From Schizochytrium sp. TIO01 (Eukaryota > Protista > Bigyra: Labyrinthulomycetes): a stretch of 64,000 bases of DNA. The DNA is taken from contig SMSO01000034.1 in assembly GCA_004764695.1 (NCBI GenBank), positions 2,294,001 to 2,358,000 of the forward strand. Reading direction: 5' to 3'. This document shows positions 8,990-32,600 of the stretch, in pieces. The stretch's first letter is position 1, and each line of letters starts with the position of its first letter. The notes beneath the pieces were generated by a model that was not told the DNA's origin, searched no databases, and saw only the letters and a program-made list of their open reading frames with translations. A program made the translations under genes and the position numbers.

Positions 8990-9836
8990 CGCGCTGCGAG
9001 CCCTAGAGACTCCCAAGGGTCACGCAGCGAGCCTGGAATCGGGGTTTGCCGCCCTTCACGCCAGTAACCAAATAGAACCAATACGGAACCGGTGCAGAAC
9101 GCGCGATCAAAATTGGGATGGCGAGATGGAATAGGGCTTTTGCAGCATCTGTACAGCAAGAGAAAGCTCCAAAGCTGGTTTAGGTAGGTTAAGGCGCGCC
9201 TTTTGAATCATAATCCCCTGAGAATGCGATGAATGAGACAACGATTTGAGATAGCGAATGTTGAGGAAACTTAGTTTATGCGTTGAGTTTTGATTGGGAG
9301 GTGACCTGATGAGGGTATAGATAGCTTCAGGAAAGAAATGTTTCGGATAAGCAAACAAAGATATCAAGCACAAACTAAATCGATATTGAAAAGTGGCCTG
9401 CAAACAATTTCTGGAAAGGCACATTTTATATATTTGGCCTCAGTCAACTACGATGGAATTACACAGCAGCAGCACGCGCCAAAAGTTGTATAAATTCATA
9501 AGAGGTAAGCTGACCAATAAGGAAGAGAAATGCATTTGTTCAAGAAAAGTCCACACCAAAGCATTTGAAAATGAAAGATAACAGTAAAAGAAAGTATACA
9601 TTTAGGTGTTTATAGCGACCCTTTGGCGCCTTTTTGTGAAAGTTAGGATGGTATGATAAAAAACGAGGAGGCCAGTTCTCGTGGTGTGGCTTAAATTTCT
9701 TCCCTTGGCTGATGATGATGCGTAGCCCGCTCCCCTCAGCTAGCTAGCAATGACAAACAAGCATGCATTTGCGTGTGGTGCAAAGGAATTGCCTGGATAT
9801 TGCACGCATGCACGTCGTGTGAGCCAGCGAACGGAC

Positions 9837-15046: not shown

Positions 15047-17836
15047 TTACACTTGGGATGCAGCAGGCTCTTGGGTCACAACAATCTTGCCATTGGATGA
15101 AGACTTCTTGGAGGCGTTGAGCTTTAACAAACACATAGCAGCTGCAGCAAGCAAAGCAAGACCTCCGACAGATCCCACAACAGCTCCAACAATCGTGCCC
15201 GTATTAGATTTGGACGAAGCATCCTCGTCGCCTGTAGGAGATCTGGGGCCCACTGGGGCGGAAGTGGGTGCAATGGAGCTTACTGCAAAGTTACAAACTC
15301 CAAGCATAGGATCATGATCTGATCCACGGTATGGTGTGGTAATATCGAAGTAAGATGCAGGTTTGCTCTCGCAGGCAGCAGGGTAGCTGTATTGCGTAGA
15401 CTGGTAGTCGATTAACGCGGACTCGGGGGAGTTGATATGCCACTCATATGCATTGCCGCATGAGTTGTTCAAATTAGGAGAGATCAGGAAGTAGTCAAGC
15501 GTGCTAAAGCTACCATCGTAGACATAAGAAAACGGTTCGGCGATGTCGCGATCTGCAAGACTAATGAAGCCGGCAGACTCCGTAAACTCCTTGATGGAAC
15601 GATCATTGCGGTGCGAGTTGAAGTCGCCCAAGAGAATGTACTGATCAGTGTCCTCACCAGTCGGGTTCTCTTCAAGCCATTCCAGTAACTGTTGCACATG
15701 CTTCAGCCGAGTGTACCCACAGTTGCCTTCACCCTCGAGATGATCTGATGTGACAGGGCTGTCTTCATCGCAGGCACTTCCCTTAGATTTAAGGTGTTGC
15801 ACGACGATTGTAAAGAGTTCATCAGAGTTTACTAAGCGAAATGTTTGAGCGAGGGAAGGCCGCGACTTATCTACAGGATCAGTATACACAAGTACAGCAT
15901 GGTCTCCAACTGGAATAACAAGCTCCGGCTGGTAAATGATGGCACATTTGATAACATCGCCACCAATAGTACCAGTAGCAATGTACTCCCACTTGCCTTC
16001 GACGCCAGCTTGTGTGTTAAGGCCGTCCACAAAATTAGCTAGAGTGACGTCTTGGTTGTTCTCAACTTCCTGCAAACCAAAGATAGCAGCGTCAAGTTCG
16101 ACAGCCGAAAGAAAGATCTTGGTACGCTGACGAATAAACTCGGTTTCGTTGTCGGCACCCCGGCAAGAGCTGCAACCATCGTCGACAAAATCGGTGAAGT
16201 AATTCTCCACATTGAGGCCGCCAACACGAATTCGGCCCACGCTGATGTCGTTGCTAGGCACGTAAGGATCAATATCAGCAACACGAGCAACCGGAGAAAC
16301 ATCCCAGGTGGATTTCATGAGCTCGAGGCCAGTCTGAGTAGGGACTAGTGTGTTGTAGTCATACTCAAAGCGAATGATTGCTGTGGCTTGCAAGGCTTCC
16401 TGTGCAATAACAGTTCCAGAACGGATGGAATCATCACCACCTACAGGCCAGGCCTGAGGTACTGGGCAGGAGGTGCTTGAACCATCGTCAAGCTTAAGCA
16501 GCCGGCGAGCATTTAAGTCAGCCTGAGCGACTGCTTCGTCACCAGGATTGACCACCATAGTTTCGGCATAGATGCGTCCACCTTGAGAAATGCCAAGCGT
16601 ACCATACCTAAGTCCATAGGTATCTCCAATGGTCATATCATGCGTAAATGCCACAAGCATGTCTTCAGCACTCGCATAAGCTGTGCTAAGGTCATCGACT
16701 GGCAGTGTAAACTCCGGCACATTCACCTCAGCGGCAAGTGCCGCCCCCAAAACATTGTTCACAGTTACTGTCTTGTCGCTTTCTAGCACAGAAACAGTAC
16801 CCGTAGAGATAACAGATGGGACGAGCTGCGGCCGATCGTTGTACTCTGCAGTGTCTGCCTCCAGCTGAATAAAATCTCCCTCGGTAAACACAGTTCCTGC
16901 ATTACAGTTGTAGCCACAATACACAAAGATGCCCTCGGAGCTCGTAGAACTCGTGTCTGCGTCAGCGTCCTCCTTTGTCATTTGCATAAAGAATCCGCGT
17001 CGCGTACTGCTTCGTAGGTCGTTGGTGACAACTCCTTGAACTAGCACGGTCCCGCCCGTGGTCCCGCCTGTAACAGTATCGCGTACGCTCTTGATTGAGC
17101 TGACAGAGAGGGGCACTGGCGCGGGCGTCGGACTTCCTGTGGATGGCGCAGGAGTTCCGGGATCTTCGGCATCTGTTACAGTGAAGCTACTGGGCGATGT
17201 ACCTGAAATCTCAGTTGAGCTCTGGGTCCAATCCGAAGATGTGCTCAAAGCGGATTGGAGCTCTGCAGTGGTGCCAGAAGTGACTCCCATATAGAGCGCA
17301 TTTTTTACACCATCAGTCAGAGCAAGAGCGCTCGAGCCGTCAGTCAGCCCAGCTGGTAGCGAGCTCGAAGACGTGCCAGTAGTGTAGGTGGAATCCCAGG
17401 TGCTTCCATACATGAAGCCATACACGAAGTTGGGACTTTCTTCGGTGCCCTGATAGAGGAAGATATTGTCTCCTCCATTCGCCAACGCAAGGTTGCCCGA
17501 AACCGAGGCCCATTCGCTGGTAAGGCTAGTGCTCGAGTAGGAGAATACTGTGCCTGCAGGCATGGCGGCAGCTGCAGTGAACTCATAAATACCTTCGTTT
17601 GTGTTGAAACTTCCTGAACTCGTATAGCCGTTGTCTGTCAAGCGGAATGTAGTCCCCGCTTCGAGGTTGGTCAGCGTGACGAATTGCACGGACTCGCCGG
17701 AATTCTGATTTACTTCAACGACTGCGATTTGACCAGCTGTGAGACTTGTCTGGGCGACCGCCGAAGGCACGCTAAGTGCCAGAGCGACTACAGCAAGCCA
17801 TGTCGCGAGCTTTTCTTGTAAACTTGCCATCATCAT
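15047..17836 (-). CDS. ExeM/NucH (Xds-like) extracellular endonuclease, type I membrane-anchored: signal peptide, LTD-like module, OB-fold, EEP nuclease domain, TM helix
   Basis: Signal peptide ending AVA|Q; OB-fold VQGVVT..GFFMQ..SSEGIFVY; EEP motifs NVENYF, GLQEVEN, RPSLAQTF, HLKSKGS, LLGDFNSH, SYVYDGSFSTLDY, WHINSPE, PYRGSDHDP; C-terminal TM IVGAVVGSVGGLALLAAAAMCLL followed by lysines. Confidence 0.9.
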   Translation of the reverse strand: MMMASLQEKLATWLAVVALALSVPSAVAQTSLTAGQIAVVEVNQNSGESVQFVTLTNLEAGTTFRLTDNGYTSSGSFNTNEGIYEFTAAAAMPAGTVFSYSSTSLTSEWASVSGNLALANGGDNIFLYQGTEESPNFVYGFMYGSTWDSTYTTGTSSSSLPAGLTDGSSALALTDGVKNALYMGVTSGTTAELQSALSTSSDWTQSSTEISGTSPSSFTVTDAEDPGTPAPSTGSPTPAPVPLSVSSIKSVRDTVTGGTTGGTVLVQGVVTNDLRSSTRRGFFMQMTKEDADADTSSTSSEGIFVYCGYNCNAGTVFTEGDFIQLEADTAEYNDRPQLVPSVISTGTVSVLESDKTVTVNNVLGAALAAEVNVPEFTLPVDDLSTAYASAEDMLVAFTHDMTIGDTYGLRYGTLGISQGGRIYAETMVVNPGDEAVAQADLNARRLLKLDDGSSTSCPVPQAWPVGGDDSIRSGTVIAQEALQATAIIRFEYDYNTLVPTQTGLELMKSTWDVSPVARVADIDPYVPSNDISVGRIRVGGLNVENYFTDFVDDGCSSCRGADNETEFIRQRTKIFLSAVELDAAIFGLQEVENNQDVTLANFVDGLNTQAGVEGKWEYIATGTIGGDVIKCAIIYQPELVIPVGDHAVLVYTDPVDKSRPSLAQTFRLVNSDELFTIVVQHLKSKGSACDEDSPVTSDHLEGEGNCGYTRLKHVQQLLEWLEENPTGEDTDQYILLGDFNSHRNDRSIKEFTESAGFISLADRDIAEPFSYVYDGSFSTLDYFLISPNLNNSCGNAYEWHINSPESALIDYQSTQYSYPAACESKPASYFDITTPYRGSDHDPMLGVCNFAVSSIAPTSAPVGPRSPTGDEDASSKSNTGTIVGAVVGSVGGLALLAAAAMCLLKLNASKKSSSNGKIVVTQEPAASQV

Positions 17837-20800
17837 TCTTGTTTTCCGGAATCGACAAGTGCAAATGGCTTGCCTTGGTCCATATGCAAGAGACCCTTCG
17901 TGGTGAAGCCCTGTCGAGTTTCGGATTTACTTGCTGCAAGAACCCAAGAGCTCGAAGAACCGATTCTTGCGACCGTGGTGATAGTATGCAGATAGAGCTT
18001 CAAAAAGCCTGCGAGCGGGTCCTACTAGTAGAGCCGTGAGTATGTGAAAAACGTGCCACAAAGTTCGGTTCGACAGAGCATTGGCACGTGTAAATCATCA
18101 AGGCACGGGGAACTTCAAGCCGTGGGTCCGTTTTCGATAGTCAAATAGGCCATATGCCTGGTGCGGCGCTGCAAGATCTGCAATTCTTTGTTCAATGATG
18201 CTTACATAATTAGAAAATTATTTTTTTTAATAATAATAATATATTTTTATTTCTTTTCTTTTTTATGATAGCTGGATACATGTCACGGTAGACTCTAGAG
18301 GAGGAGCACATAAACATTGAAGCCTGGACTAGCAGATGAATCTTTTTTATTTCAAAGAGACAATTTAGTTATCATGCTGTAGCAAAACACAGGGGTGGGG
18401 AAGAAACAAGCAAGCTGGGATTTCAAGATGCCAATGAGGGCGTCTTCACCTGTAAGGTTTGTGCTAATCTTGTTGACGATAAAAATCGTGAAGTTGAAAA
18501 GCGGACTTTTTGAATCTTTTCTGCACAGGCGGCGCGTGGATATTTTGTCTGAATGTTATATTTTTGCAGATTCCTTAATAAATGCTAGACCTGCATTGTA
18601 ATTATATGGGTCCTCAGGATCAATGCAACCCCACTCGAACTATCACCGCAACCTTGCCTATGTGTTTATGAGATGAGACAGAGTTCAAGTAGTCTATTGT
18701 CATCTTTCCAGCTCCCATCGAAATCGCTCCTCACATTCACGTGCCAGTGAACCGCAGAGTCTACAACGTTGCAATTAAGCTGGCATGGCTTGCATCTTCC
18801 ACCCGTCGCCATCGGAGTTGGGAAACCTCAGAACAAAATACCCCAATCCCTCTTGAATGTGCAGCTCACCATGGTTCTTAGTATCTCAGTGAGTCATCTT
18901 GCCAGGAAATAAGCATCATGCACTCATGCATGCCATGAACCATGCATATGTCATGCCCATGCAAGTGTGCACATCTATTTTCAGCCTGCTAGCTTGCCTT
19001 AGTGCGATCTTGGTCGCCTCCAGCACGGTGCCTGTTGTGTAGATGTTTACACGAAAGCACCGCTCGAGGTCTTGAGCAGCCTGTCAGCGAGTTCCCTTTC
19101 TAAAGGGGTGGAAGATCCCGTCGTGCACACAGACTTCTCGCGACCCGTCATCGCCACCTAGAACCCAGTCCGGCAAATAATTCTCCTCTCCCAGCTCTTC
19201 CAGCCTCGCCCTTGAGCTCCTTTCTGTCAAGCATGCCTATCCTCCTGAATGCATGCATACATTCCTTCATGCATGCATGTTCAATACGATGCATCACGCG
19301 CCTTTGTAGATTTTCCAAAGTACATGCCGAATCTTAGATTTTGCAAGGATGATTCATCATCGTCCACAGGAGAGTCACTCCTGACCGGGACTAGCCGGAT
19401 CAGTCGCACTCGCTTTGGCGCGCCCTCGCCGCGGCGTGTAATTGGAAGCTGCGCGCGGCGCACACTCTTACTCTGTCATAGTACGGATGAAGAAGTAGGT
19501 AAGTAATTCTGATGATGAAGAAACAAATCGAAAGCCAAAGAAAGCCTTGGACAAAGAGGTTTCTTTCGAGTCGCTGGTCGGTTGAAGATCATCGCCTTAA
19601 TCTCCAAGCCATGTGTCATTCCCCACCCCGCTGCGCCGGACGAATAAGAAAACACAGGCTGCGTGCCTCGAGTTCTGCCCCGAATGGATTACTTTTGCAA
19701 GAAGTTCTGGCGTTTAGCTGTGCATTGCTTAATTGTTTGGCAGAATCCATCGCCTCGTGGTGGCCATGTTGAAATCGTTCTGCGAGGGCTCTGGAGGTCG
19801 ACTTGAGTCTGCAGCTCAGCTGCTATGGTTTCTCGCGTTGGAGTTGGATTTCTTGCGCCACTCTCGACGACCTCTTGGAGATGGTCGGTCTGCAGATAGA
19901 TATCCTTTGAAGTGGTTGTCGTAGTTCGTTCAGATGACTGAATGTTGTTGCAAGGCATACATACATACTTCGACCAGCCCGATCATCGTGACCATGATCA
20001 CAATCAAGATCAACATTTCCAGCAGAGCAGCAGCAGGGAGCCACTCGGCCTCGAGGAACTTGGAACGGTCGAATTGCAATCTTGGACTCTACGATTCGCG
20101 AGTGGTTCATTGACCTTCGAGCGACCTGTAAGGTTTCTATTTCACCAATATTGTGGCAGTGACACAGAACCCGACATCAGAGCAAGAGCTTCAGGACGAA
20201 GCGAAAGCAGCAGCATTATGTAGTGGCGGGCACGAGCTACAAATGCATCGCTTCAATTGCAAAGCTCGCAAGATTCATAATCAGCGAAAATCACATCGCT
20301 GTCGCAAAAAGTAGTAGGTAACGGGGTAGACCTCGTTCTTGATCGCCTCGAGCCACCCACTCGGGTTTACAGGTATACTTCCGAGCCACTTTATATCAAC
20401 CAAACGCAAACAACCGAACAGTCAGTCCTCTGCTGCGGTCTCCTGTGCCAAGCAAGGCAACCAACAACCAAAACGTGACCGAGACTAAGCTTGAACTTGA
20501 AGCGCTTCTCTCCAAGTTTATCGACTATCGGCCTTCAGCTCTCCATTCGCTTTTCTTCTCTTTCCTTTCCATCGATAGTTTGCGAGTTATAACTTGAAAC
20601 CAAAACATCATATCAAATATCTAAAATCTACCAACTTTTATGATAAAATATAAAATATGAGACATTATATTGAAACAGGCAAAAATCGCTCACTTTCCTT
20701 CTTTCTTTCTTTCTGCCTTTCTTCCCACTCCAGATAGAAGTTACTTACTTCCTGCTAGAGATACATACCTTCATGAAAGGGCTCTTCACAGCAGATTCGT

Positions 20801-22811
20801 GACGAAACAAATGCAACAGATGAAACACTAGTAAGAATAATATATATATTTTTATTTTTTTATTTTTTTAAAGTTAAAATAAAATTAAACTCAGAATTAG
20901 TTATATAGAAATAGTTATTCTGAGTGGAGCATAGAAATGAAAGAATGCACACATGGACATGAGCAGATAAGGCACGCGCAGGAGGCGTTCGAGCGCGAGC
21001 CGGATGCGGTCTAGACCTCTGCTGAGCTCTGATGCTTGCTGCATCTAGCGAGGTGCTGGAGCTGATTGTGGTTATGTAATCGTCTTTAGACGCGCGGTTT
21101 TCAGGCCGCAGGCTGCTGATTGAGGATGGTTTCTTACTTTGTGATGCGCGTTTCATTGATTGTTGTCGTTTTTTAGTTTTAGGTTTAGATGAATATATAT
21201 ATTTTTTTGTAATTTTTATAATTTATTTTTTTAAAAAAATGTATATTATTCTAAAGGAAAAGATTTTATTTTTGTTTTAATTAAAAAAACAAATATTGTG
21301 CTCTCTTGAATTGTGAATTCTGAATCATCGCAGAATCGACTGCACGAACGAAGGGTTTCGACCACGATGCACTCGAACCACGCGCATTTGCAGATGAACT
21401 CGATGCACGTGAGGGATCGATGGCCCGGGCCTTTCAGCATCTCGTGAATATCGAGCATCTGGAAGCAGGCTGCCAAGTAAGTTGTCAACTTCTTGAGATG
21501 GTGGTGATGACAAGGAATGTGATGAATGAGCGCGTGGACCTTGAAGTCACTGGCTAACTAAGTTGGCACGGATCGAAGGGGGGAAGATGCAGCTTGACGG
21601 GTCGTCGCATCTTGGCCTTGATCGCAGATTCTGCAATCAAACCCAAAGAATTGCTTGGCGTGGACCTCAAGATCGAGCCCAGCTCCTCGAGGTAGTGTCG
21701 ACTCGAGGATGGAATTACAATTTGCAAATCACAGCCGGGAGCCGCCCACCCTACAGAAGGATTGATTTATGTGCTCAGGCCTTTAAAATGTGGGCCATCG
21801 TGCGCAGCTTTCAAGAAGAAGAACTTGAGCTGACGAAGGAAGATCTTGAAGAACCTCGAGGACGAGAACTCAGGACAAGAACCAGCAAGAGCTGGAGATC
21901 AGCAACCCGAACCGATAATTTGGGAAGCCTGCAGGTACGGTTTATATGCGTGCTTGGGGATTGGGTGAGGTTGTGAACAAGGCGAAGAGCTGAGGAACAT
22001 TGCAAATGCATTGTGACTTGTGCTGATTTGGAGAACTTCTGTTGAGGTTAAGAATTGTCATGACATGAAATGCCACGGCTGCTGTAGAAGAGGGTTGTAA
22101 TTGGGATGGCCTCAGGGTAGCAGCGACCGACCCGCTGGCATCAGCGAACCAGAGGCGATCAGTGTGTCTGCATGAAACCAGCGCAAAACGCGGGTGGCAA
22201 TCTGTTTCTAAGATTACATTCTTTCTAGGACTCCTCGCGGTTTTCCACCGGAATTGCAAAGCGGCTCACAATCCATGATAAGTGACAACGAATGCTTCTT
22301 TAGAAAAACTGATCAAAACCTTTTAAACTAATTAATTAATTAATTGATTATAATTAATTTAAAATTGATAAATAACTTGAAGAATCTATTATTTATTTAT
22401 AATAGTAGTTGATTAAAAAAAGGAAACATGAAAACTCTTCCCAAAATAAGTTTGATCGATAAAGCAGATGCGGGAAGAATAGTAAAGGTACTAGGCAGCT
22501 TTACCATGGATTGCATCTTCTTCGACCCGTGGCCATGGCTCAGTGTGGTAAAAGGATCCTCGTAGGCGCGAGATCAGTGACTAAAAAGAAGCATGAAAGA
22601 GACTTGGGCTGTTGGGCACATCATAATGCAAAAGAAGAAGAGGCCTTTAGAATGAGTTTGGATCTGAGGTGAAACTCTTTGCACTGGGGATTGACGAGGA
22701 GCTGCGACACCAGCAAATTCGAAACCTGGGTTCCCACCCAACAAGACAATTGAGCTAGAAACTGAAAGAACAAACTCACCAACTTAGTTGATAACGGGGG
22801 GTATTGTCAAG

Positions 22812-24746
22812 ATGCTTCTGCGCACTGCTGTAAGTCTGGCTACCCTAGCCGTCGCAACTGCTCAGACAAGTTTTCGTATTGTCCATATCAATGATTTTCA
22901 TGCAAATGTAGAAGGACTCAATGCATATGCTAGCCCTTGTGGCAGTGACCCTAGTGTCTGTGATGGAACGTGGGCGCGTCTTTTCACGCAAGCTAAAAAG
23001 TTCGTCAGCGAGTCTTCCACAGATGTGCTATTCCTTGACGACGGTGACGAATTTATGGGCACCATCTGGAGCACATATTACAAGGGCGCAGAAGCAGCCA
23101 TTTTTCTTAACGAACTGTGCGACACCAACACATCAAATGTGAACCGTGCAGGCTTCGTAGCATGCGTTGGAACTCTGGGCAACCACGAGTTCGACTATGG
23201 ATACGAAACTGTAGCTGAGTACGTGGATACACTCACTTACCCCATCGTTGTTGCGAACCTTGAGGATGAATGTGCAGAGAATGAGGCCGGCACCCACGCG
23301 GCCCAAGCCCTTGGTAGCAACATCGAAAAGTACGTCGTCCGTACAATTGAAGGCGTTCAAGTTGCAATCACAGGCTACCTCACACCAGAAACTGCCTCTA
23401 TCTCGTCCATGCCTAGCTGTGTGACTCTCATTCAAGAAGAAACTGCTCTGGATGCAGTCATTGCTGATCTCGCAACAAACTACCCCGATATCAATATTAT
23501 CTTGAGCGTAGGCCACAGTGGATATGCTCGTGATCAGCAAATTGCTGCAAACGTGGAGGAACTTGATCTCCTCGTGGGCGGCCACTCCCATACTTTCTTA
23601 TGGGGTGATGCTGCTGGTAGCGAAGGCCCCACGTTGTCAGGAGATGCTACTCAAACGTCGCTGGGTGCTTACCCCACCATGGTTGGTAACACGCCTGTGC
23701 TCCAAGCTTATTATGCTGGCGTGTACCTTGGTGCTGTAGACGTTGATTTTGACGATAGCGGCGTGTTGCTCGAGACAACACCGCTCATTTCGTTATTGGG
23801 ATCCGCAGGTGAGGGCAGCGCTGCAGCGGAGCAGTACCAAGTCGAACCGGACCCTGGTATCCAAGCTCTTGTGGCAGAACTCGCTGGCCCCCTTGATACA
23901 TACAAGAACACTGTCGTAGGACAGACTAACATTCAGCTTGTCGGAGACCGCACGGTCGTTCGCTACAAGGAGACTAACTTGGGCAACTTTGTGTGCGACT
24001 CTATGCTTGACAACATTAACACCTTGTCTGACTTTACGGAGTCCTACGGTAGCGTTCCGCTCTGCGTCATCAATGGCGGTGGTGTTCGCGCTGACATCTC
24101 GGTTGGAAATGTCACCGTAGCGGATGTGCTTGCTGTGTTGCCGTTCGCAAACTCCCTTGCCGTTATTAACATCACCGGAGAAGAGCTTTACTATGCCTTG
24201 GAAAGTGCTGTGGCTCGCGTCGGTGAAGGCCAAGGCGAATTCCCGCAGGTTGGTAGCGGAATGCGTGTCGTTTTCGACAAGCGCATTGAGACTGAATGTG
24301 GTCAGTCTACCTCAAAGCCTGATTGCTACACCACAAGCGGTGTACCTGTGAAGCGTGTCCTTGAAGTTTACTACAACGACACCCTTATTGAGAACTCTCC
24401 TGATGTTTTCAACCTTTTAGTAACCAACAATTACATTGCCGTTGGCAAGGATGGTTATGTTGCTTTTGGGGAGGCCGATTTGCTGCTCGAGTATGGTGAT
24501 ATTCTTGCCAGCGTTCTTCAGGACTACATTGGCCTTGCACCTGTTACGGAAGAGCGTGCCAAGGAGGAATGCCGTCTCTATGATATTGTAGATCCTAGTG
24601 CGGCTTGCCAGGAGCTTCTTGGAGCTACTGCCGCACCTACCGCTGGGGAAACGTTTACACCTACAATGACTCCATCATCAGCTGGAATCCAAAGGGCTGG
24701 CATTGTGTTTTCCGCTATGATGCTTATGGCAGCCATGATGGTCTAA
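22812..24746 (+). CDS. Secreted, probably GPI-anchored 5'-nucleotidase (CD73/UshA metallophosphoesterase family)
   Basis: ATG at 22812 with signal peptide; motifs HINDFH, DDGDEFMGT, LGNHEFDYG, GHSGY, VGGHSH, ETNLGNFVCD, NGGGVR, LPFAN, FPQV; Thr/Pro linker, small residues, then a hydrophobic C-terminus with no cytosolic tail (GPI signal). Confidence 0.92.
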   Translation: MLLRTAVSLATLAVATAQTSFRIVHINDFHANVEGLNAYASPCGSDPSVCDGTWARLFTQAKKFVSESSTDVLFLDDGDEFMGTIWSTYYKGAEAAIFLNELCDTNTSNVNRAGFVACVGTLGNHEFDYGYETVAEYVDTLTYPIVVANLEDECAENEAGTHAAQALGSNIEKYVVRTIEGVQVAITGYLTPETASISSMPSCVTLIQEETALDAVIADLATNYPDINIILSVGHSGYARDQQIAANVEELDLLVGGHSHTFLWGDAAGSEGPTLSGDATQTSLGAYPTMVGNTPVLQAYYAGVYLGAVDVDFDDSGVLLETTPLISLLGSAGEGSAAAEQYQVEPDPGIQALVAELAGPLDTYKNTVVGQTNIQLVGDRTVVRYKETNLGNFVCDSMLDNINTLSDFTESYGSVPLCVINGGGVRADISVGNVTVADVLAVLPFANSLAVINITGEELYYALESAVARVGEGQGEFPQVGSGMRVVFDKRIETECGQSTSKPDCYTTSGVPVKRVLEVYYNDTLIENSPDVFNLLVTNNYIAVGKDGYVAFGEADLLLEYGDILASVLQDYIGLAPVTEERAKEECRLYDIVDPSAACQELLGATAAPTAGETFTPTMTPSSAGIQRAGIVFSAMMLMAAMMV

Positions 24747-25387
24747 ACAGCTGTCAAAAAATCAAAATCCCTTACTTTAAGTAAATGTGAAGAAATGTTG
24801 TTTTTCTGTTCATTGATTATTTAATCACACCCGACACGTACATAGGGCAGAATCCAAGAGGCAAGTGTTGCTTACTCATTCCACTTTATTGAAGCTTCTC
24901 GGACGCGCAGAGCTTATGGTGCAGGTCCATTATGTTCCTTCTCATCATTCCCGATCATAGATAGATAGATGCGTCACATCAATGTCAAGTTTGACCAGCT
25001 TGGGTAACACCGCGGTCGTATCGCCACGCGCTAGTGCCAACCTGACAAACCCTTATGATAAGCTTAGCTAGAGACTAGTAAGAAGAATGAAAAGAAAAAA
25101 GAAAAGAAAAAAGAAACAACCATACAACAATCAGAAAAAAGTTGGGTCGTCAACTTCAACTCGGTTCACGCCGGTTTCCCCAGGGTCTGCCATAAGACCT
25201 TGGCTTTGGGGGGATATCCTTGAGGTAGGCTAACTTTCAAACTTTGGTGCTAAGCAGTCCACTCGTTTTGCGAGTTGTTTCTGGGACAATTAGCTCTCGA
25301 GCGAGACTGGCTTTGCCGCTCTGGTTCCGGTCTCAAGGAGGCAGGCAACGAGCTTCGCAAAGTTTCACTAGAAAAACTCAAAGAAAT

Positions 25388-26428
25388 ATGGCAACCCAAC
25401 TTCGTGTGTGGATGGGCCTATACCTGTTTTCAGGAGTTATGCAACCGCTTCTGATGGATCAGGTTAAATATATGGGCGCTACGAGCGAATGGCCTCCAAC
25501 GCTTTTGCCCCTTCTAGCACGTTGTGTCGGTATGTACTTCGTCAAGTTTGTGGCCGAGCTACTTGTGAAGCTTGGCATCACAGAAAAGTCTCTTGGAAGG
25601 CCACAAGTTCAGGATAAGGTCATTTACGCAGAAACTGAGAGTGGGCAATTGTCAAAAAAACTTCTTGCTGTTGCTGTAGCAATCGATATTTCTAGCGGGA
25701 TGCTTACGACAAGTGGCTTGTTGCTCGTCGGCTCAGGAGTTTACACCGTCATTTACTCTTCAACGACTGCCTTCACAGCTGTCATGTCATGGTTCCTTGG
25801 TCAACATCTAGTGAGTGGACAGATCATCAGCATAGCCATGATTACCATGGGTCTTGTCATCAATGGGCTCGCGGTAATCGATGCTGCGGGCTCAGCTTCC
25901 AGCGCAGAGGCGCTTCATGTCGCCCTTGGTATCATTTGTGTTCTGCTGGGTACGGTGTTACATGCTGCTGCATATGTGTTCAACGAAAGGGTAATCAAAA
26001 CTCACAATGTGTCACCCTTTGTGCTTTGTTCTCAAATGGGCGCCGTTGAAGCAAGCTTGCTGGCCATCTACAATCTTGGGCTCATTACTGTATATGGCTC
26101 CGACTTCCTTTACCTTGATTCTATTAGGGCCACTGGAACCTCGTCATCTGATGTCGCAATTGGGTACTTAGCCTTGATGTTTATGGACTCTCTGCATGCG
26201 CTATCATTCTTTGCGATGCTTGGACAGCTGGGCGCTGTGACAACTGGTGTATTGAAATCGTTACTTGCAGTAAGTGTGTTTTCTTTTGCTGCTATATTTT
26301 TTTGTGACAAGGAAGCAACCCAATGTTTTTCTGTAATGAAAGCAGCCTCATTGCTTGTTGTACTTTTTGGTAGTGCTGCGTACCGCATCTCCACTGACCA
26401 AGCCAGGGTCATGGAGCGTGCAAAGTAA
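25388..26428 (+). CDS. Drug/metabolite transporter (DMT/SLC35-like) membrane protein, ~9-10 TM
   Basis: ATG at 25388 (MATQLRV); GLLLVGSGVYTVIYSSTTAFTAVMS, YVFNERVIK and LGAVTTGVLKSL resemble nucleotide-sugar/SLC35-type DMT repeats. Confidence 0.78.
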   Translation: MATQLRVWMGLYLFSGVMQPLLMDQVKYMGATSEWPPTLLPLLARCVGMYFVKFVAELLVKLGITEKSLGRPQVQDKVIYAETESGQLSKKLLAVAVAIDISSGMLTTSGLLLVGSGVYTVIYSSTTAFTAVMSWFLGQHLVSGQIISIAMITMGLVINGLAVIDAAGSASSAEALHVALGIICVLLGTVLHAAAYVFNERVIKTHNVSPFVLCSQMGAVEASLLAIYNLGLITVYGSDFLYLDSIRATGTSSSDVAIGYLALMFMDSLHALSFFAMLGQLGAVTTGVLKSLLAVSVFSFAAIFFCDKEATQCFSVMKAASLLVVLFGSAAYRISTDQARVMERAK

Positions 26429-26690: not shown

Positions 26691-29600
26691 TCAAAAAGAT
26701 GAGCGTGAGGTCTCTGAGTCGACAGACAAAAAACTACTTGCGCTTGAGCTAGCAGTAGTGGGTGAAGTTGACGCTTTTGATCCTGATGAAAACTTTTCCT
26801 GTAAATATGATTTTGTATTGCGGACAGAACGAGCATTATGAACTCTCTTCCAAAGTGGCTCCCGACCCCACGGCTTCCCACTCCACATATTTCGGCGAAG
26901 TAAAAGAGGATAATCATCGAGCTGCAGAAAACCAATATCCTGTGCCTCAAATTGATTTCCATGTGCCTTTAATTCAATCTGAACAGCATTGTCAAAAGGT
27001 CGATACTTATGAGCTACACCTGGAATCCATGTACCAAGATCTGCTACAAATAGTTCTACGGCCCATCGAATAATTTGTGAGCTTGGTGGACGTGACAACC
27101 GCTTTAAAAGGCTGAGTGGTTGATGTGGTCCCATCATTCGGACAAACTCGTCTAAATTAATGCGTCCATCACCATCTTTATCAATAATACTGATAAAGTC
27201 ACGAATAGCTTCCTTGTTCGGCAGTATCTCCTCTACATCTAATATCTCAAGCGCTCTTTGAAACTCATCGGCGTCAACGAGGCCTGTGCGGTCCTGATCG
27301 AAAACCCTGAAAACCTTCTCCAAATCAAATCCCCCAGGTAGAGCATCAGGATTGGAATATTCAAAAACACGAAACCTGAGCTCTGCAAGGGCACTTCGTC
27401 TGGCTTGATCCCGGAAAAACTCAGCCCCCCAGACGTCCGCTTCGTCTTCGGAGTCCACTAATTCATCTAAAAGGCACGCTCTCTCTTCCTCTGTAATTTC
27501 CTGGTCGTAATCAATATTTTCTGAATCAGAGGGATTCTCCACGCTTTCTTCGTCATTTATAGGTAAAGCTTCATCTCCACTTGCTCCAGAGATTGGAGAT
27601 GTGACATGACGAGACTCCATTACAATCATCGCATCTTCCAAGGCCTTGAAGAATAATTTGCAATCAATCAAATTGTCGTCAGACTTGTCGCCAACCCTGA
27701 ATGCTTGCCAATCCACTTCTTCAAGCATTTCGGGGACCAGGCCCGCGTCCTCAAGATAATCACAAAGAACCTTTTGAACATCTCCATATGGGACAATACA
27801 ACTATCTCCCCCGATTGAACGGAATTTAGCTCGAAGATACATTATGCCCGCAGTTCGGTTTTTATGTAAGGTCTGGCTGAGCCAAGACAGGGCATCTACC
27901 GCAGGTGGATTACATATATTTTCCCATGCATCTAAGGACAGCGGGTCTGGGAACAGATCTAAAAACATATTGAGTAATTCATCCATCTCCTCTGCATCCT
28001 GAATGCCTTCTACTGTGCGCAAGAAAACAAGGCATTCTAAACGACGCTTCAAAAGGTCTAATAATGCACCGTGAGGTATTTGAGAATCAAAGCCATGTCG
28101 AAGAAACACGCGTCTCGCATCACCCATACTTTCGACTCGCTCACGAACGTGAAGTAAAAGACCGGTTAAAATTTTGCTCGTTTCTTCAAACGGTGAAAGC
28201 ATTTTACTCACACGCTCAAAAAGGTCGTTTGTACTTATGCTTACACACAGGTATAGACGGAGGATACTCTTGCATTCTTGAATTGAAAACCAACCCAGGA
28301 CACCCTGCGCAACTGTCAAACGAAGTTGAAGACCACCTGTGCTGTGATCTGTCAATCTCCAGGCATCAACCTCCACAAGTTCTGCGGTATTCGGCGAAGT
28401 GATAAGCTTTCCTATCCACCGTACACGCTGAAATGCTGCCTTTAGAGAGTCAAGGTCTGTGCCACGTTTATCGTTCGAGGACTGCAAATACACTCGTTGA
28501 GCAAAAATCTTGCTCTGAGTAGGTGGCATCCACACTGCTCTTTCTAGAGTTTTACTACCAGACTCTCCTACCTCAACTCCACTAAAGTCAATTTTCATCA
28601 CCCTTGGATCCCGATTAGAATCCCCAGAAGTAGGGGGGAGCACGGCAAGGAGTGAGTAGAGTTCCGCCTGCTTGCAGCGCGCCCGAGCAGGAACATGTTC
28701 ATATCCTTTTCCTGCTGTAACTTTTCTCTTTTTGGAGAAGTTGAGCTTGACGGTTAATTGATATTTTGTACTGTTCCACGCTGCGCTCAGTATCGCTTTA
28801 TCAGTTTCAACCTGCTCTACTGTAACCGGAGAATCGAGAAAAGCTCGTGTAAGTCCATAAACATCAAGTTCAGCACAGGCAAGGGCTAAAGCATGCACAC
28901 GAGAAAGTATCTCATCGTTTTGATTTTGTGGTGCTTCATTTTGAAAAGACTCCAGCTCCAGCGATCGTGTGAATATTCTTTGTGATCTCTTGGCTTTAGT
29001 TTCCACCCATGCATATGACTTGGTGGCGCTTCGTTGAAGATACCGAAATGATTTGAAACGGGCATTATCGATGGCTTGAATAGAATCTTTAGTGGTTTCT
29101 TTGGGCGGATCTGACTGTAATGCACGAAAAAGAGCTAAGCCTACTTGAGATGTGTCGTGAATAGGATGAATATCTGTTATTGCACTTGCCAAATCAAATG
29201 CCATTTTACTGATGAGAGCTTCATCATTCAGAACCAACGTAGCCTGAAGAACTTCCAGCACACTTTTTTGAGCCCGTCTTTCACTGAGACAGTTAAGAGG
29301 AATTTCTTTGGTCATATCTGTAATGCCAAAACTCCGCATTAATTTCTGCAGCTCAGCAATTCGCCCAGGCACATCAATACTGGCCTTTACTTGTTGCTCC
29401 TCAGCTAGTAGACCATAGACCGGCGCTTTTCGTTGAGTCTCGTCCTGTTGCTCTTCGGCATCAAATGGGGCAAGAAAAAGCTTCAGACGTAGAATCTCCT
29501 TAGACAAGCGTGGCGCGTCCAAAGTAAGAGAGGACACCAACCCATGCCGAAAAGGCATTTGTATAGCTTCAACAATGGTAGCGTGCTCTCTTTGTACAAC

Positions 29601-32600
29601 TCTCCCCTCTGCAGAACGCAATAAAAAGCCTCGACTTGCGGCCTGAATTCGAGTTGCTGCTTTCACCTGACGGGTTTCTCTCTGCGCCATCGCATCGCTT
29701 CTCACCAGCCATCCTCGAACACGAGTTTGGATTTTCGTAGCAGCACGCTTTTGAGAGGCAATAAGCTCCACCTGTTTTTGCCGAATGTTGTGCAGGCGAA
29801 CTCGACGCTGTCTTGCTTGTTTTCCTCGAATTACTCTTTGCAAAGCAACCGCACCATTCCTCTGATCAGACATCATTTTGACATACTCCCTTTGCTTAGC
29901 AACGACTCGTCTAGCATCTTTCATAGCAGCATTCCGCCGAAAAAAATGTTGCACTTTCTTAGCACTGCGATCAATAAAGGTGCGGCTTGCTTCTAATTTT
30001 GCGAGTACTTTAACAAGAAGTGGGTCAGGATACCCATCTGCTTGATATTTCTGATAAGAAGAGCAATCATAAATCATCTCAATCGAGTCAACCCCAAGCC
30101 GTAAGGATCGACCATCCTGTAGAATGAGAAGTTCATCAACTTCATCATAACATGAAACCCGTGAGCTTTGCAGACGTTGCAGTTTACTGTTCTCTGAGGA
30201 TGCGTGGTTTACCGGTGCAGAGATTAAAACCCCCCAATTCACCTCGTGTAAAGTTTTGGAACGTTTCTTTCGAAAGAAACCCAGGTCGCCACGTCGTTTA
30301 GTAGCTTCGTGCAGATGTGCTTGCATGGTTTCAAGCTTCTGCTCAAGCAGCTCGCGTCGTGTTAGACCTCTTCTTGTTGAGGTTTCGGTCAAACGGCGTG
30401 ATTGCTCACGAAGGGCGCTCAAGACACTGTCAAGCGCAGCTTGTTTTCGGAATATATACTTTTCAATGTAAAGGACAAACTCCTCAACACTGATTCTACC
30501 ATCTTTATCAACATCGAGACTGCGAAAGAGCTGTTTCACCGAAGACGCGTCCATGACTCCAAGAGATCGCATGCCGCTCGAAAATTCAAACTGATCCAGC
30601 ATTCCACTGTCATTAGCATCTAATTTTTCAAACAATCGCCGTGAAACACTTTTGAAGTCATTCAGTAGCGCACCATGACCACTTTTCTTAATAAGTGACA
30701 ACAGGTGCTGGATTATCCGATCATTGGCGTCACCAATGAGTTCTTCGTCAGCAATACCATTGTTCGTTAAGATCTGCATCACAAGTTGATGTACAATAAT
30801 GTCTTCATTTGCTAGGTGAAAGCGCTGACATAGTCTCTCAACGAATCTGCTGCTCGCGAACTGCTCATCGGGTTCCATGAATGATTGTACGATTTCTGCA
30901 AATGCCTTCAGATTTAGTTTGGTGGGCCATTTACCCTCCTTATAATGTTCCTGCAGATGAGCTACAAACTTTTCCACCGTATTCTCAAAGCTCCGCTCCT
31001 CTGCCGCTAGTGACTTCAGCCATGCTTGCCGCACCACATCTATCGGCAGATTCTCCTGAGCAAACGATTCCAGCTTGCTTTTCACTTCCAAAATAGGGCT
31101 ATTTATGGACAGATCCTGAACTTTCGAGAGTACAGATACAAGGTTGTCAGCGGATTGTGATAGTGTAGACCTTGCACTAGCCATTGGAGAAGAATCTTGT
31201 AAATCAAAGAACTGCATAAAATGCTCACGGGTGCATGATTTGGGTTGACTAGCCATAAGAGCTTTAGAAATTGATCTCACTATATCAAGGCGATCGTCAT
31301 TTGCACTTTGTATCGAAAGTAGAGCACGCATGCTCCCTTCAAATTCATCAATGTCAATTACACCGTCTCCATCCATGTCAAAGAGATCGAAAACCTCATC
31401 TGCGCCCTGTGCTTGGTCTACTATATCGTGCAGTATGGAAAACATACTGAGTTGCTCTGCACGCGTTGCAGACATAACCGGCTTCTCATTTCGAGTGTTC
31501 TCCTCGAAATCTTCATACTCTGATGTCGAGTTGGAACTCTTCTGAGCTGCGTCAAGTTTTGCTCCTTTAGAAAGATGCTCAATAATAGCCTGCGCGCCCT
31601 GCATCTGTGTATTCTTTGTGATCACTGTTGAATTGCTTGACAACATACCCAAAGCTTTGAGCATAGGCACTGTGCTTGCATATTCTGCTGGTGTACGTCC
31701 ATAATTGTCTGCTAGGGATACATCAGCTCCAGCTTTGAGCAATGCTTTCACCAGATCTGTACGATGAATTATGACAGCTTGATGAAGGGCACTCATGCCC
31801 TTTTCATTTCGAGCAGTGAGGAATCGTGGGTTTCCCGACAGCTTGTTTGTCAGCTCTTCTGCTGGCGTTGCCTTCAATTCCTCAAGGAGCAAAAAGTCAC
31901 TAGCCTCCGAAAGCAAAAGCTCTGGATCTTGTTTGCTGTCACGACTCTTTGTCTTAAAGCATAACATGGCGGCCACGCGCTGGGATTGTTGGTGTTCCTT
32001 ACCGGGTTGAAAATCTTTTCTTCGAATCGAAAGTCTTATTTGGCCATGCGGACTTAGGTCATACCACATACACCCCGCCTCTGATACATCTTCAAGAAGC
32101 GGAATCTTTGCATAGCCTAGCAGAGGCTCTTGGTCAATTTGTGAAAGCTCCACACCTAAATATGGTGTTTCCATCTTGTTATTACAACCTGAAAAGTGCA
32201 AGTCCATTGTGTTCTGCTCTGATCGAGTCCAGCGAATGTGTTTGTTATTTCCCCAGCTAAGTGCAGTTTCGGCACAGCCTTGAGGTCGTGTCGGGCCCCA
32301 AGGAAGAACTTCACAACGCACTTTGAGTCTGCGTAGACTTTGATCAGTGCCTTCTGAAAAATTCCGGGCCTCGACAACACGAACTTCAATCATGCAAGGG
32401 GTGTACAAGCTGTCTGCGGGTATTTGGTCCTTTGGAACGTTTTCTGAAGATCCTGTATCAGAGTTTCTTTCTTCCAAATTTATGTCTGAGAGTTTTAGCA
32501 TACCACAACGTTGTTCATTGTCGGAGGTGTCTTGTGTCCAAATCTTGACAAGCAAAGCAACATCGTTGTCCTGAGAACGCATCCAATGTGTAAATTTTGT

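What the first reader, a model, noticed from the sequence alone, without database searches (positions are those of the whole stretch)
15047..26428. Candidate eukaryotic cluster for extracellular DNA/nucleotide scavenging: surface nuclease, ecto-5'-nucleotidase and transporter
Seen: a TM-anchored ExeM/NucH nuclease (-) and a GPI-type 5'-nucleotidase (+) lie head-to-head across ~5 kb with no recognisable gene between them. Both have signal peptides cleaved before QTS and membrane-proximal APT-type linkers, and a DMT/SLC35-like transporter follows 640 bp downstream. Established: in Shewanella (ExeM + UshA) and Vibrio cholerae (Xds/Dns + UshA + nucleoside uptake) these enzyme families act sequentially (DNA to nucleotides to nucleoside + Pi) to use eDNA as a nutrient. 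Inference: a co-regulated, surface-displayed eDNA-catabolic module in an osmotrophic marine protist, possibly on the ectoplasmic net. The transporter's involvement is the weakest link.
Basis: partly seen in the sequence, partly recalled or inferred. Interest (0 to 1): 0.85.

Follow-up and report, generated by a model that had tools for sequence, protein, structure and literature searches.

The report
Surface nuclease beside ecto-5'-nucleotidase in protist
A marine thraustochytrid protist carries a bacterial-type cell-surface DNA-cutting enzyme next to an animal-type surface 5'-nucleotidase, a pair that probably lets it strip phosphate and nucleosides from outside DNA or RNA, but nothing shows that the neighbouring genes are regulated as one unit.

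Summary
There are three intact single-exon genes. One is an ExeM/NucH nuclease with a signal peptide and a C-terminal TM helix (15047-17836, -). One is a CD73-type 5'-nucleotidase with a signal peptide and a GPI-like tail (22812-24746, +). One is a 10-TM DMT/SLC35-fold carrier (25388-26428, +). The 4,975-bp spacer shows no coding potential.

The enzyme pairing has independent support. In bacteria, ExeM/NucH nucleases are repeatedly fused to 5'-nucleotidases (9 of 68 homologs). They are also co-oriented neighbours in 6 of 80 loci, against about 0.5 expected.

The trio is three consecutive genes in Hondaea fermentalgiana. However, the unrelated giant gene next door is collinear too, so this is ordinary local synteny and not cluster-specific conservation.

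The two enzymes have different origins: the nuclease is nested among bacterial sequences, while the 5'-nucleotidase is sister to animal CD73.

The carrier's nearest folds are Golgi/ER/plastid antiporters. In one more distant relative it does not neighbour a 5'-nucleotidase within the contig. The genome also has three ENT nucleoside transporters.

Verdict: a plausible two-enzyme extracellular nucleic-acid scavenging pair; a regulated cluster and a role for the transporter are unproven. The scan had already noted the nuclease on this same stretch (s1-824608).

The parts
15047..17836 (-). ExeM/NucH-family nuclease gene, 929 aa, single exon, single copy in the genome
   Evidence: NF033681 scores 384 bits against a cut-off of 300. 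It is the only match in the 64-Mb genome. Its codon score is like that of neighbouring genes.
17753..17836 (-). Nuclease signal peptide (about residues 1-28, predicted cleavage ...AVA|QTS)
   Evidence: Hydropathy and inspection. The Hondaea ortholog has ...TAA|QTT.
17102..17749 (-). Nuclease N-terminal domain (about residues 30-245): a beta-rich part followed by a Ser/Thr-rich low-confidence linker; no Pfam family
   Evidence: A profile of window + Hondaea matches only the N-termini of P0003 (E 8e-32) and P0070 (E 1e-27). Pfam finds nothing significant. The Atlas gives LTD-bearing clusters only as a weak lead, score 0.85. AF2 pLDDT is low here.
15302..17041 (-). ExeM_NucH core (residues 266-845): OB-like region plus EEP (DNase I-like) catalytic domain
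   Evidence: The motifs N542, E590, D738/N740, D781 and S839-D-H-D842 are invariant across 20 homologs. The AF2 core is confident, and Foldseek top hits are EEP enzymes including DNase I and DNase1L3.
15113..15202 (-). Nuclease C-terminal transmembrane helix (within residues 879-908), preceded by a Pro/Ser/Thr linker and followed by a 25-aa tail (15050-15124)
   Evidence: Hydropathy peak of 2.26. The Hondaea ortholog instead ends in a bare hydrophobic tail.
17837..22811 (.). 4,975-bp divergent spacer with no detectable gene
   Evidence: Coding score is negative, with several stops per 450 nt in all six frames. No Rfam hit or tRNA. Single copy. Only short AT-rich repeats.
22812..24746 (+). CD73-type ecto-5'-nucleotidase gene, 644 aa, single exon
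   Evidence: Pfam Metallophos + 5_nucleotid_C. Human CD73 E 4e-64. Metal-binding and substrate motifs are kept. The tree places it sister to animal CD73.
22812..22862 (+). 5'-nucleotidase signal peptide (residues 1-17, ...ATA|QTS)
   Evidence: Inspection. The Hondaea ortholog has ...ATA|QNS.
24678..24743 (+). GPI-attachment-like C-terminal signal (small residues S-S-A-G, a short spacer, then a hydrophobic tail running to the last residue), preceded by an Ala/Pro/Thr linker
   Evidence: The GPI transamidase subunits Gpi16 and Gaa1 are encoded in the genome. No GPI predictor was run.
25388..26428 (+). Lineage-restricted DMT/SLC35-fold carrier, 346 aa, 10 TM helices, substrate unknown; its membership of the module is doubtful
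   Evidence: AF2 pLDDT 85. Foldseek hits Vrg4, TPT, CMP-sialic acid transporter and SLC35B1 at E 1e-6 to 1e-4 and 10-17% identity. No Pfam or NCBIfam hit of its own. EamA hits 6 of 10 family members. Only 9 relatives at E<=1e-3 in 5.8 billion proteins.

Best explanation
Two neighbouring genes encode enzymes displayed on the outer face of the cell membrane. They probably act one after the other on extracellular nucleic acids.

The first is a type-I membrane-anchored ExeM/NucH (EEP, DNase I-like) nuclease. It was acquired from bacteria by the common ancestor of this organism and Hondaea. It would cut DNA, and probably RNA, into 5'-phosphorylated oligo- and mononucleotides next to the cell.

The second is a native eukaryotic CD73-type 5'-nucleotidase, probably GPI-anchored. 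It would remove the 5'-phosphate, giving inorganic phosphate and nucleosides that are taken up by ordinary phosphate and ENT-type nucleoside transporters.

Shown: gene integrity, family membership, conserved catalytic residues, secretory and anchoring signals, the different origins of the two genes, and a recurrent physical link between the two families in bacteria.

Inferred: enzymatic activity, cell-surface location, sequential action in vivo, and a nutritional (P, N or C scavenging) purpose.

The adjacency may help co-expression, but it is not shown to be selected or co-regulated. The DMT carrier downstream is most simply an unrelated neighbour.
For: Family membership:
- Nuclease: NF033681 384 bits vs cut-off 300; catalytic columns invariant; EEP fold.
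- 5'-nucleotidase: CD73 E 4e-64, with the DxH, GD, GNHEFD, GHSG, GGHSH, NGGGVR and LPF motifs kept.

Topology: both have N-terminal signals and C-terminal anchors. The GPI transamidase is present.

Rosetta-stone link: 9 of 68 bacterial nuclease homologs (about 4 lineages) carry the nuclease core joined directly to a complete 5'-nucleotidase.

Bacterial adjacency: 6 of 80 ExeM/NucH loci have a co-oriented 5'-nucleotidase gene within 8 kb. About 0.5 is expected from roughly 2 copies per 4.8-Mb genome, Poisson P about 1e-5.

Established pathway: V. cholerae uses Xds/Dns, then UshA/CpdB/PhoX, then Pi and nucleoside uptake (PMC4714964).

Genome context:
- This 5'-nucleotidase is the only signal-peptide-bearing one found; the sole paralog lacks a signal.
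- The nuclease is single-copy.
- The only Endonuclease_NS-family nuclease gene found lies elsewhere.
- Three ENT genes are available for nucleoside uptake.

Synteny: the trio are consecutive genes GBG30914-30916 in Hondaea.
Against:
- The Hondaea synteny extends to the unrelated giant gene GBG30913, so it is uninformative about selection.
- The genes are 5 kb apart and divergent, so they are unlikely to share a core promoter.
- The two genes have different evolutionary origins, so they were not inherited as a unit.
- In Shewanella, ExeM itself matters for biofilm rather than for growth on DNA-P (PMC6085458).
- A type-I or GPI protein could also end up in an endolysosomal compartment.
- The adjacency was picked out post hoc from a very large scan.
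Confidence: 0.55

Rival explanations
1. Chance neighbours with separate jobs. The nuclease might serve matrix or biofilm remodelling, defence against DNA traps, or attack on prey and competitors. The 5'-nucleotidase might serve general salvage of extracellular ATP, AMP, NAD or UDP-sugars, or adenosine signalling. The adjacency would be an accident of where the transferred gene landed, preserved only by general collinearity.
For: - The collinear block includes an unrelated gene.
- The spacer is 5 kb and the orientation divergent.
- The two genes have different origins.
- ExeM in Shewanella is mainly a biofilm factor (PMC6085458).
- The finding was selected post hoc.
Against: The two families are fused or adjacent in bacteria far more often than chance, so a functional coupling is the prior expectation. 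A randomly inserted gene would land beside the one ecto-5'-nucleotidase among roughly 10^4 genes only about 1 time in several thousand (inference).
Confidence: 0.3
2. One reading: a co-regulated three-gene module in which the DMT carrier imports the nucleoside or base products (or exports something needed), displayed on the ectoplasmic net.
For: - The three genes are consecutive and in the same order in Hondaea.
- The DMT superfamily does include plasma-membrane importers of nucleobases and nucleosides. SLC35F2 imports queuine and queuosine (PMC12207525). One family member gives a weak PUNUT hit, E 0.035.
- The Atlas lists SLC35F-type clusters among the nearest.
Against: - The best fold matches are Golgi/ER/plastid antiporters at 10-17% identity.
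- In contig L007, from a more distant relative, the carrier sits between phosphatidylserine decarboxylase and a fatty-acid elongase, with no 5'-nucleotidase in the contig.
- Three ENT genes exist.
- The synteny is not specific.
- No expression data exist.
- An A. limacinum proteome paper on candidate net proteins has none of the searched words for the two enzymes in its text or in the five supplements held.
Confidence: 0.12
3. Both enzymes work inside the endomembrane system (a digestive vacuole or lysosome-like compartment), degrading nucleic acids taken up or autophagocytosed, rather than on the cell surface.
For: Signal peptide plus TM or GPI anchor only shows entry into the secretory pathway. 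The window's nuclease has a 25-aa cytosolic tail that could carry sorting information, and its Hondaea ortholog lacks that tail.
Against: CD73-type GPI proteins and ExeM/NucH relatives are cell-surface or extracellular where studied (PMC6085458; the CD73 structures). The closest bacterial relative, P0003, carries a sortase-type surface anchor. Thraustochytrids are osmotrophs (own knowledge).
Confidence: 0.1

Closest known systems
Vibrio cholerae eDNA-phosphate pathway (Xds, an ExeM-family nuclease, and Dns; then UshA, CpdB and PhoX; then Pst and NupC) (PMC4714964)
   Same: The two enzyme families and the reaction order are the same: an ExeM-family EEP nuclease followed by a Metallophos/5_nucleotid_C 5'-nucleotidase, both extracytoplasmic, with Pi and nucleosides taken up separately.
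   Different: The V. cholerae genes are dispersed, PhoB-regulated and act outside the cell or in the periplasm. Here the host is a eukaryote, the enzymes are membrane-tethered by TM helix and GPI anchor, the 5'-nucleotidase is of the CD73 rather than the UshA branch, and regulation is unknown.
Shewanella oneidensis ExeM (PMC6085458)
   Same: The NF033681 core is shared. Both have a signal peptide, a large EEP domain and a C-terminal membrane anchor. ExeM is cell-associated rather than released.
   Different: The window protein fails the ExeM-proper model (NF033680: 107 bits vs cut-off 1300). It has no detectable LTD. It has a eukaryotic-style TM helix plus tail instead of GlyGly-CTERM. In Shewanella, ExeM acts mainly in biofilm, and EndA serves DNA-P use.
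Bacterial ExeM/NucH-5'-nucleotidase fusion proteins (for example the 1416-aa Microbacterium protein P0065, plus P0052, P0055-P0060 and P0063)
   Same: The same two catalytic modules are coupled, in the order nuclease then nucleotidase.
   Different: In bacteria it is one polypeptide. Here there are two divergently transcribed genes 5 kb apart, and the 5'-nucleotidase is not from the bacterial clade.
Animal CD73 (NT5E), the GPI-anchored ecto-5'-nucleotidase
   Same: It is the sister clade in the tree (SH-aLRT 93-96), at about 33% identity over the whole enzyme. All active-site motifs are kept, and both have a C-terminal GPI-type signal.
   Different: CD73 generates adenosine for signalling. Here a nutritional role is inferred. 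The more distant protist homologs P0072 and P0073 use a TM helix plus tail instead of GPI.
SLC35/DMT carriers: Vrg4, the CMP-sialic acid transporter, SLC35B1, the triose-phosphate translocator, and SLC35F2
   Same: The 10-TM DMT fold is shared, TM-score 0.64-0.78.
   Different: Sequence identity is only 10-17%. The window protein has no Pfam hit of its own. Its family is restricted to a handful of labyrinthulomycete-like sequences. Its substrate and location are unknown.

Membership tests
ExeM/NucH extracellular endonuclease (NCBIfam NF033681) | Whole-protein score above the curated cut-off of the family HMM | tested here: met
   384.1 bits vs cut-off 300, covering profile positions 1-541 of 546. 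The genome-level search gives 385.5 bits.
ExeM/NucH extracellular endonuclease (NCBIfam NF033681) | Intact EEP catalytic and metal-binding residues | tested here: met
   N542, E590, D738/N740, D781 and S839-D840-H841-D842 are invariant in a 20-sequence alignment. The core has the EEP fold.
ExeM/NucH extracellular endonuclease (NCBIfam NF033681) | Export signal, giving an extracytoplasmic location | tested here: met
   An N-terminal hydrophobic segment at residues 9-32 with an AxA site. This rests on inspection; no predictor was run.
ExeM/NucH extracellular endonuclease (NCBIfam NF033681) | N-terminal lamin-tail domain (LTD), as in ExeM and most bacterial members | tested here: inconclusive
   No PF00932 hit even at E<=10. 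The Atlas gives LTD clusters only at 0.85, which is a lead. The N-terminal domain matches only P0003 and P0070.
ExeM proper (NF033680, GlyGly-CTERM exonuclease ExeM) | Score above cut-off, and a GlyGly-CTERM/rhombosortase signal | tested here: not met
   107 bits vs cut-off 1300. The C-terminus is a TM helix plus a 25-aa tail, not a GG-TM-basic end.
ExeM/NucH extracellular endonuclease (NCBIfam NF033681) | Ca2+- and Mg2+/Mn2+-dependent, sugar-non-specific nuclease activity | not testable with these tools
   This is a biochemical property reported for ExeM (PMC6085458).
CD73-type ecto-5'-nucleotidase | Metallophos N-domain plus 5_nucleotid_C domain, with the dimetal and substrate-binding motifs | tested here: met
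   Pfam hits. In the alignment to human CD73, the DxH, GD, GNHEFD, GHSG, GGHSH, R, NGGGVR and LPF motifs are kept, and an aromatic residue (Y) stands where I expect the second stacking Phe; that position is assigned from memory, not shown.
CD73-type ecto-5'-nucleotidase | Phylogenetic placement with eukaryotic CD73 rather than with UshA or other bacterial clades | tested here: met
   Window + Hondaea + two protist-like sequences (support 100) are sister to fish, frog and insect CD73 (93; 96 with one more sequence). They are separate from the alphaproteobacterial clade and from the nuclease-adjacent bacterial genes. This is a quick tree of 38 rows.
CD73-type ecto-5'-nucleotidase | GPI anchoring | tested here: inconclusive
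   The C-terminal 22 aa fit the pattern of small residues, spacer and hydrophobic tail, and the Hondaea ortholog does too. Gpi16 and Gaa1 are present. No predictor or experiment was available.
DMT superfamily / SLC35-like carrier | 10-TM DMT fold | tested here: met
   AF2 pLDDT 85, pTM 0.83. There are 29 PDB matches at E<=1e-3, and every listed match at or near that threshold (ranks 1-31) is a DMT carrier.
Nucleotide-sugar transporter (PF04142) or another named SLC35 subfamily | Significant match to a subfamily profile | tested here: not met
   The window protein has no Pfam or NCBIfam hit. Only 2 of 10 family members reach PF04142, while 6 of 10 reach generic EamA.
Eukaryotic catabolic gene cluster (co-regulated neighbours of one pathway) | Adjacency conserved beyond background synteny | tested here: not met
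   The Hondaea order GBG30913 (giant) to GBG30916 (nuclease) equals the window order, so the block includes an unrelated gene. The carrier is not next to a 5'-nucleotidase in L007.
Eukaryotic catabolic gene cluster (co-regulated neighbours of one pathway) | Co-expression under the inducing condition | not testable with these tools
The only indication is that 14 probable-RNA assemblies hold 22-47% of the words of 17000-23500.
Eukaryotic catabolic gene cluster (co-regulated neighbours of one pathway) | Independent evidence that the member families act together | tested here: met
   Bacterial fusions in 9 of 68 homologs and co-oriented adjacency in 6 of 80 loci vs about 0.5 expected. The V. cholerae pathway is established (PMC4714964).

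The most novel reading that the evidence does not exclude
A eukaryote has rebuilt, from parts of different ancestry, the nuclease-nucleotidase coupling that bacteria achieve by gene fusion. A horizontally acquired ExeM/NucH nuclease, refitted with a eukaryotic membrane anchor, came to lie beside the host's own CD73-type GPI-anchored 5'-nucleotidase, and possibly beside a lineage-specific SLC35-like importer. Together they would form a selected, phosphate-responsive gene cluster for feeding on environmental DNA or RNA. That would be the first such cluster in a eukaryote, and a trait relevant to the role of thraustochytrids as marine decomposers.
Probability: 0.17. Interest if true: 0.75.

Novelty: new variant of a known kind. 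Interest (0 to 1): 0.5.

Why it matters
Dissolved and detrital DNA is a large pool of marine organic phosphorus, and thraustochytrids are abundant decomposers. How they obtain phosphorus is little studied: no paper in the searched library links them to nucleases or 5'-nucleotidases.

If the pair works as proposed, it gives a concrete route for eDNA/eRNA use by a eukaryote. The route can be tested genetically if the organism can be transformed, as I recall for Aurantiochytrium.

It would also show a bacterial surface enzyme being domesticated with a eukaryotic anchor and plugged into a native ecto-enzyme.

It is also a clean case for asking whether functional gene neighbourhoods in protists are selected or accidental. 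As it stands, the enzymes are well-known families, and the pathway is known in bacteria.

Tried and rejected
Hondaea context was therefore inferred from consecutive GenBank accessions and locus tags rather than from DNA. Spacing and orientation in Hondaea are unknown.
No read-level expression, transcript ends or introns could be examined.
- Operon co-transfer of nuclease plus 5'-nucleotidase from a bacterium is rejected. The 5'-nucleotidase groups with animal CD73 and has 40% identical homologs in more distant protist-like sequences, whereas the nuclease has none.
- Naming a donor lineage for the nuclease is rejected. The thraustochytrid pair sits on a long branch beside one Arcobacter MAG, and the family is scrambled across phyla.
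- A hidden gene, RNA family, tRNA or repeat in the spacer: none found.
- Assigning the carrier to a named SLC35 subfamily failed.
- A literature search for thraustochytrid nuclease, nucleotidase or P-starvation data found nothing relevant.
- The metagenome scan with the carrier family returned only two loci. In L008 the upstream side is off the contig, so only L007 is informative.
- The S1/P1 nuclease search found nothing, but its controls were silent, so absence is not shown.

Full report
**What is there**

The window is G000:C33:2294001-2358000, from a 64-Mb, 37-contig genome. Its nearest named relative is the thraustochytrid Hondaea fermentalgiana, at 59-64% protein identity for the three genes.

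- ORF 15047-17836 (-) encodes 929 aa.
- ORF 22788-24746 (+) encodes a protein whose real start is the Met at 22812.
- ORF 25244-26428 (+) has its real start at 25388.
- All three genes are uninterrupted and have the same codon bias as flanking genes.

**The nuclease**

- It scores 384 bits against NCBIfam NF033681 (ExeM/NucH family extracellular endonuclease; cut-off 300) over residues 266-845. It fails the narrower ExeM-GlyGly model (107 vs 1300).
- The EEP catalytic columns, including the terminal S-D-H-D motif, are invariant across 20 homologs.
- The AlphaFold core is confident and matches EEP enzymes such as DNase I and DNase1L3.
- It has an N-terminal signal, a C-terminal helix within residues 879-908 and a 25-aa tail. 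It is therefore a type-I membrane protein with the catalytic part outside the cytoplasm.
- It is single-copy in the genome.
- Among 70 database homologs only Hondaea is eukaryotic. The rest are bacterial at about 27-37% identity.
- In a 91-row tree the two thraustochytrid sequences form a long branch nested among bacterial sequences, with no assignable donor.
- The N-terminal roughly 200 residues have no Pfam family. They match the N-termini of two other proteins. One is P0003, whose C-terminus is LPATG plus a hydrophobic stretch plus a basic end, that is, a sortase-type surface anchor.
- The simplest reading is an old, ameliorated bacterium-to-thraustochytrid transfer in which the bacterial anchor was replaced.
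- The Hondaea ortholog ends in a bare hydrophobic tail rather than a TM helix plus tail.

**The 5'-nucleotidase**

- It has Metallophos + 5_nucleotid_C, and its best solved relatives are human CD73 (E 4e-64).
- The alignment keeps the metal-binding and substrate-binding motifs.
- In a 38-row tree it groups with Hondaea and two protist-like sequences (support 100). That clade is sister to animal CD73 (93-96). It is apart from the alphaproteobacterial clade and from the bacterial 5'-nucleotidases that sit beside ExeM/NucH genes. The 5'-nucleotidase is thus of eukaryotic CD73 type, while the nuclease is bacterial.
- Its C-terminus (small residues, short spacer, hydrophobic tail to the last residue) fits a GPI signal, as does the Hondaea ortholog. 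The more distant homologs P0072 and P0073 use a TM helix plus tail.
- The GPI transamidase subunits Gpi16 and Gaa1 are encoded elsewhere in the genome.
- The only paralog in the genome lacks a signal peptide.

**The spacer**

- The two ATGs are 4,975 bp apart, the largest gap among the gene-sized (at least 200 aa) ORFs of this window.
- No frame shows coding potential. There is no Rfam hit or tRNA, and the stretch is single-copy.
- Fourteen transcriptome-sized public assemblies from seven studies hold 22-47% of the sampled words of 17000-23500, of which only about 24% is coding. If these are truly RNA, this hints at long UTRs or a non-coding transcript. Their nature is a guess.

**The carrier**

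- The 346-aa protein has no Pfam or NCBIfam hit of its own.
- It folds confidently (pLDDT 85) into a 10-helix DMT transporter.
- Its best PDB matches are Vrg4, the triose-phosphate translocator, the CMP-sialic acid transporter and SLC35B1, at 10-17% identity. ESM Atlas neighbours are SLC35F, UAA, NST and CRT-like clusters.
- The family is tiny and looks labyrinthulomycete-restricted. It is single-copy here.
- A plasma-membrane nucleoside or base importer of this superfamily has precedent: SLC35F2 imports queuine and queuosine (PMC12207525). However, nothing here points to that rather than to an organellar antiporter, and the genome has three ENT genes.

**Is it a cluster?**

Evidence for a functional link between the two enzymes:
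- Nine of 68 bacterial homologs (about four lineages) are single proteins with the nuclease core followed directly by a complete 5'-nucleotidase.
- In 6 of 80 bacterial ExeM/NucH loci a 5'-nucleotidase gene lies within 8 kb, always on the same strand. About 0.5 is expected from about 2 copies per 4.8 Mb, P about 1e-5.
- V. cholerae uses exactly this sequence of steps to grow on eDNA (PMC4714964).

Evidence bearing on the neighbourhood:
- In Hondaea the carrier, 5'-nucleotidase and nuclease are GBG30914, GBG30915 and GBG30916 on one 102-kb scaffold.
- As a control, the unrelated 4466-aa neighbour has its ortholog at GBG30913. The conserved order is therefore a collinear block of at least four genes and says nothing specific about selection.
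- In the one informative contig from a more distant relative (L007), the carrier is flanked by phosphatidylserine decarboxylase and an elongase, and no 5'-nucleotidase is in the contig.
- The nuclease is absent from all other eukaryotic hits, so it joined an older 5'-nucleotidase locus.
- Landing next to the only ecto-5'-nucleotidase is improbable by chance. That argument is post hoc in a very large scan.

**Verdict**

- The gene identifications and topology are solid.
- Sequential action of the two enzymes on extracellular nucleic acids is the best explanation (about 0.55).
- A selected, co-regulated cluster is possible but unsupported (about 0.17 for the full novel reading).
- The carrier is probably a bystander.
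EndA, not ExeM, is the main nuclease for DNA-P there (PMC6085458), although UshA is required (cited in PMC4714964).

**Tools unavailable**

Noticed in passing
window 17102-17749 (-); also P0003 residues 19-243 and P0070 residues 3-202: The nuclease's N-terminal domain of about 200 aa has no Pfam family. It recurs at the N-terminus of a sortase-anchored bacterial ExeM/NucH protein (P0003) and of an RTX/cadherin/Calx-beta adhesin-like protein (P0070). It looks like an uncharacterised, mobile surface module, possibly LTD-like.
   Followed up: partly
window 15050-15202 (-) compared with the C-terminus of P0002: The orthologous nucleases differ in anchor type. The window protein has a TM helix plus a 25-aa tail. 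The Hondaea model ends in a bare hydrophobic tail, which is GPI-like. This could be a real anchor switch or a gene-model difference.
   Followed up: partly
window 26691-40091 (-): The single-exon 4466-aa protein has only one relative in 1.84 billion cluster representatives when searched with its first 1200 aa. That relative is the Hondaea protein GBG30913.1 ('Parvalbumin beta', 3869 aa, 34% identity). The giant is therefore lineage-restricted and syntenic.
   Followed up: partly
Inositol pyrophosphates are phosphate-status signals in other eukaryotes, and the ORF lies about 23 kb from the proposed P-scavenging pair. This is probably coincidence.
   Followed up: no
   Followed up: no
L007 and L008 (JACLAD010012576.1, JACLAD010006402.1): Two contigs of one public assembly carry paralogous copies (49% identity) of the DMT carrier, set among intron-poor eukaryotic genes (PS decarboxylase, ELO elongase, RabGAP-kinase, VWA). 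They probably come from another labyrinthulomycete that has two copies of the carrier.
   Followed up: partly
window 7484-9016 (-): A 510-aa ORF with five WRKY19-type zinc-finger repeats (PF24906, E 2e-35), a plant-associated domain, in a stramenopile genome.
   Followed up: no
L028, L031, L038, L055, L076, L082: In these bacterial loci an ExeM/NucH gene and one or two 5'-nucleotidase genes are co-oriented neighbours, which suggests operons. L076 has a 5'-nucleotidase on both sides of the nuclease.
   Followed up: partly
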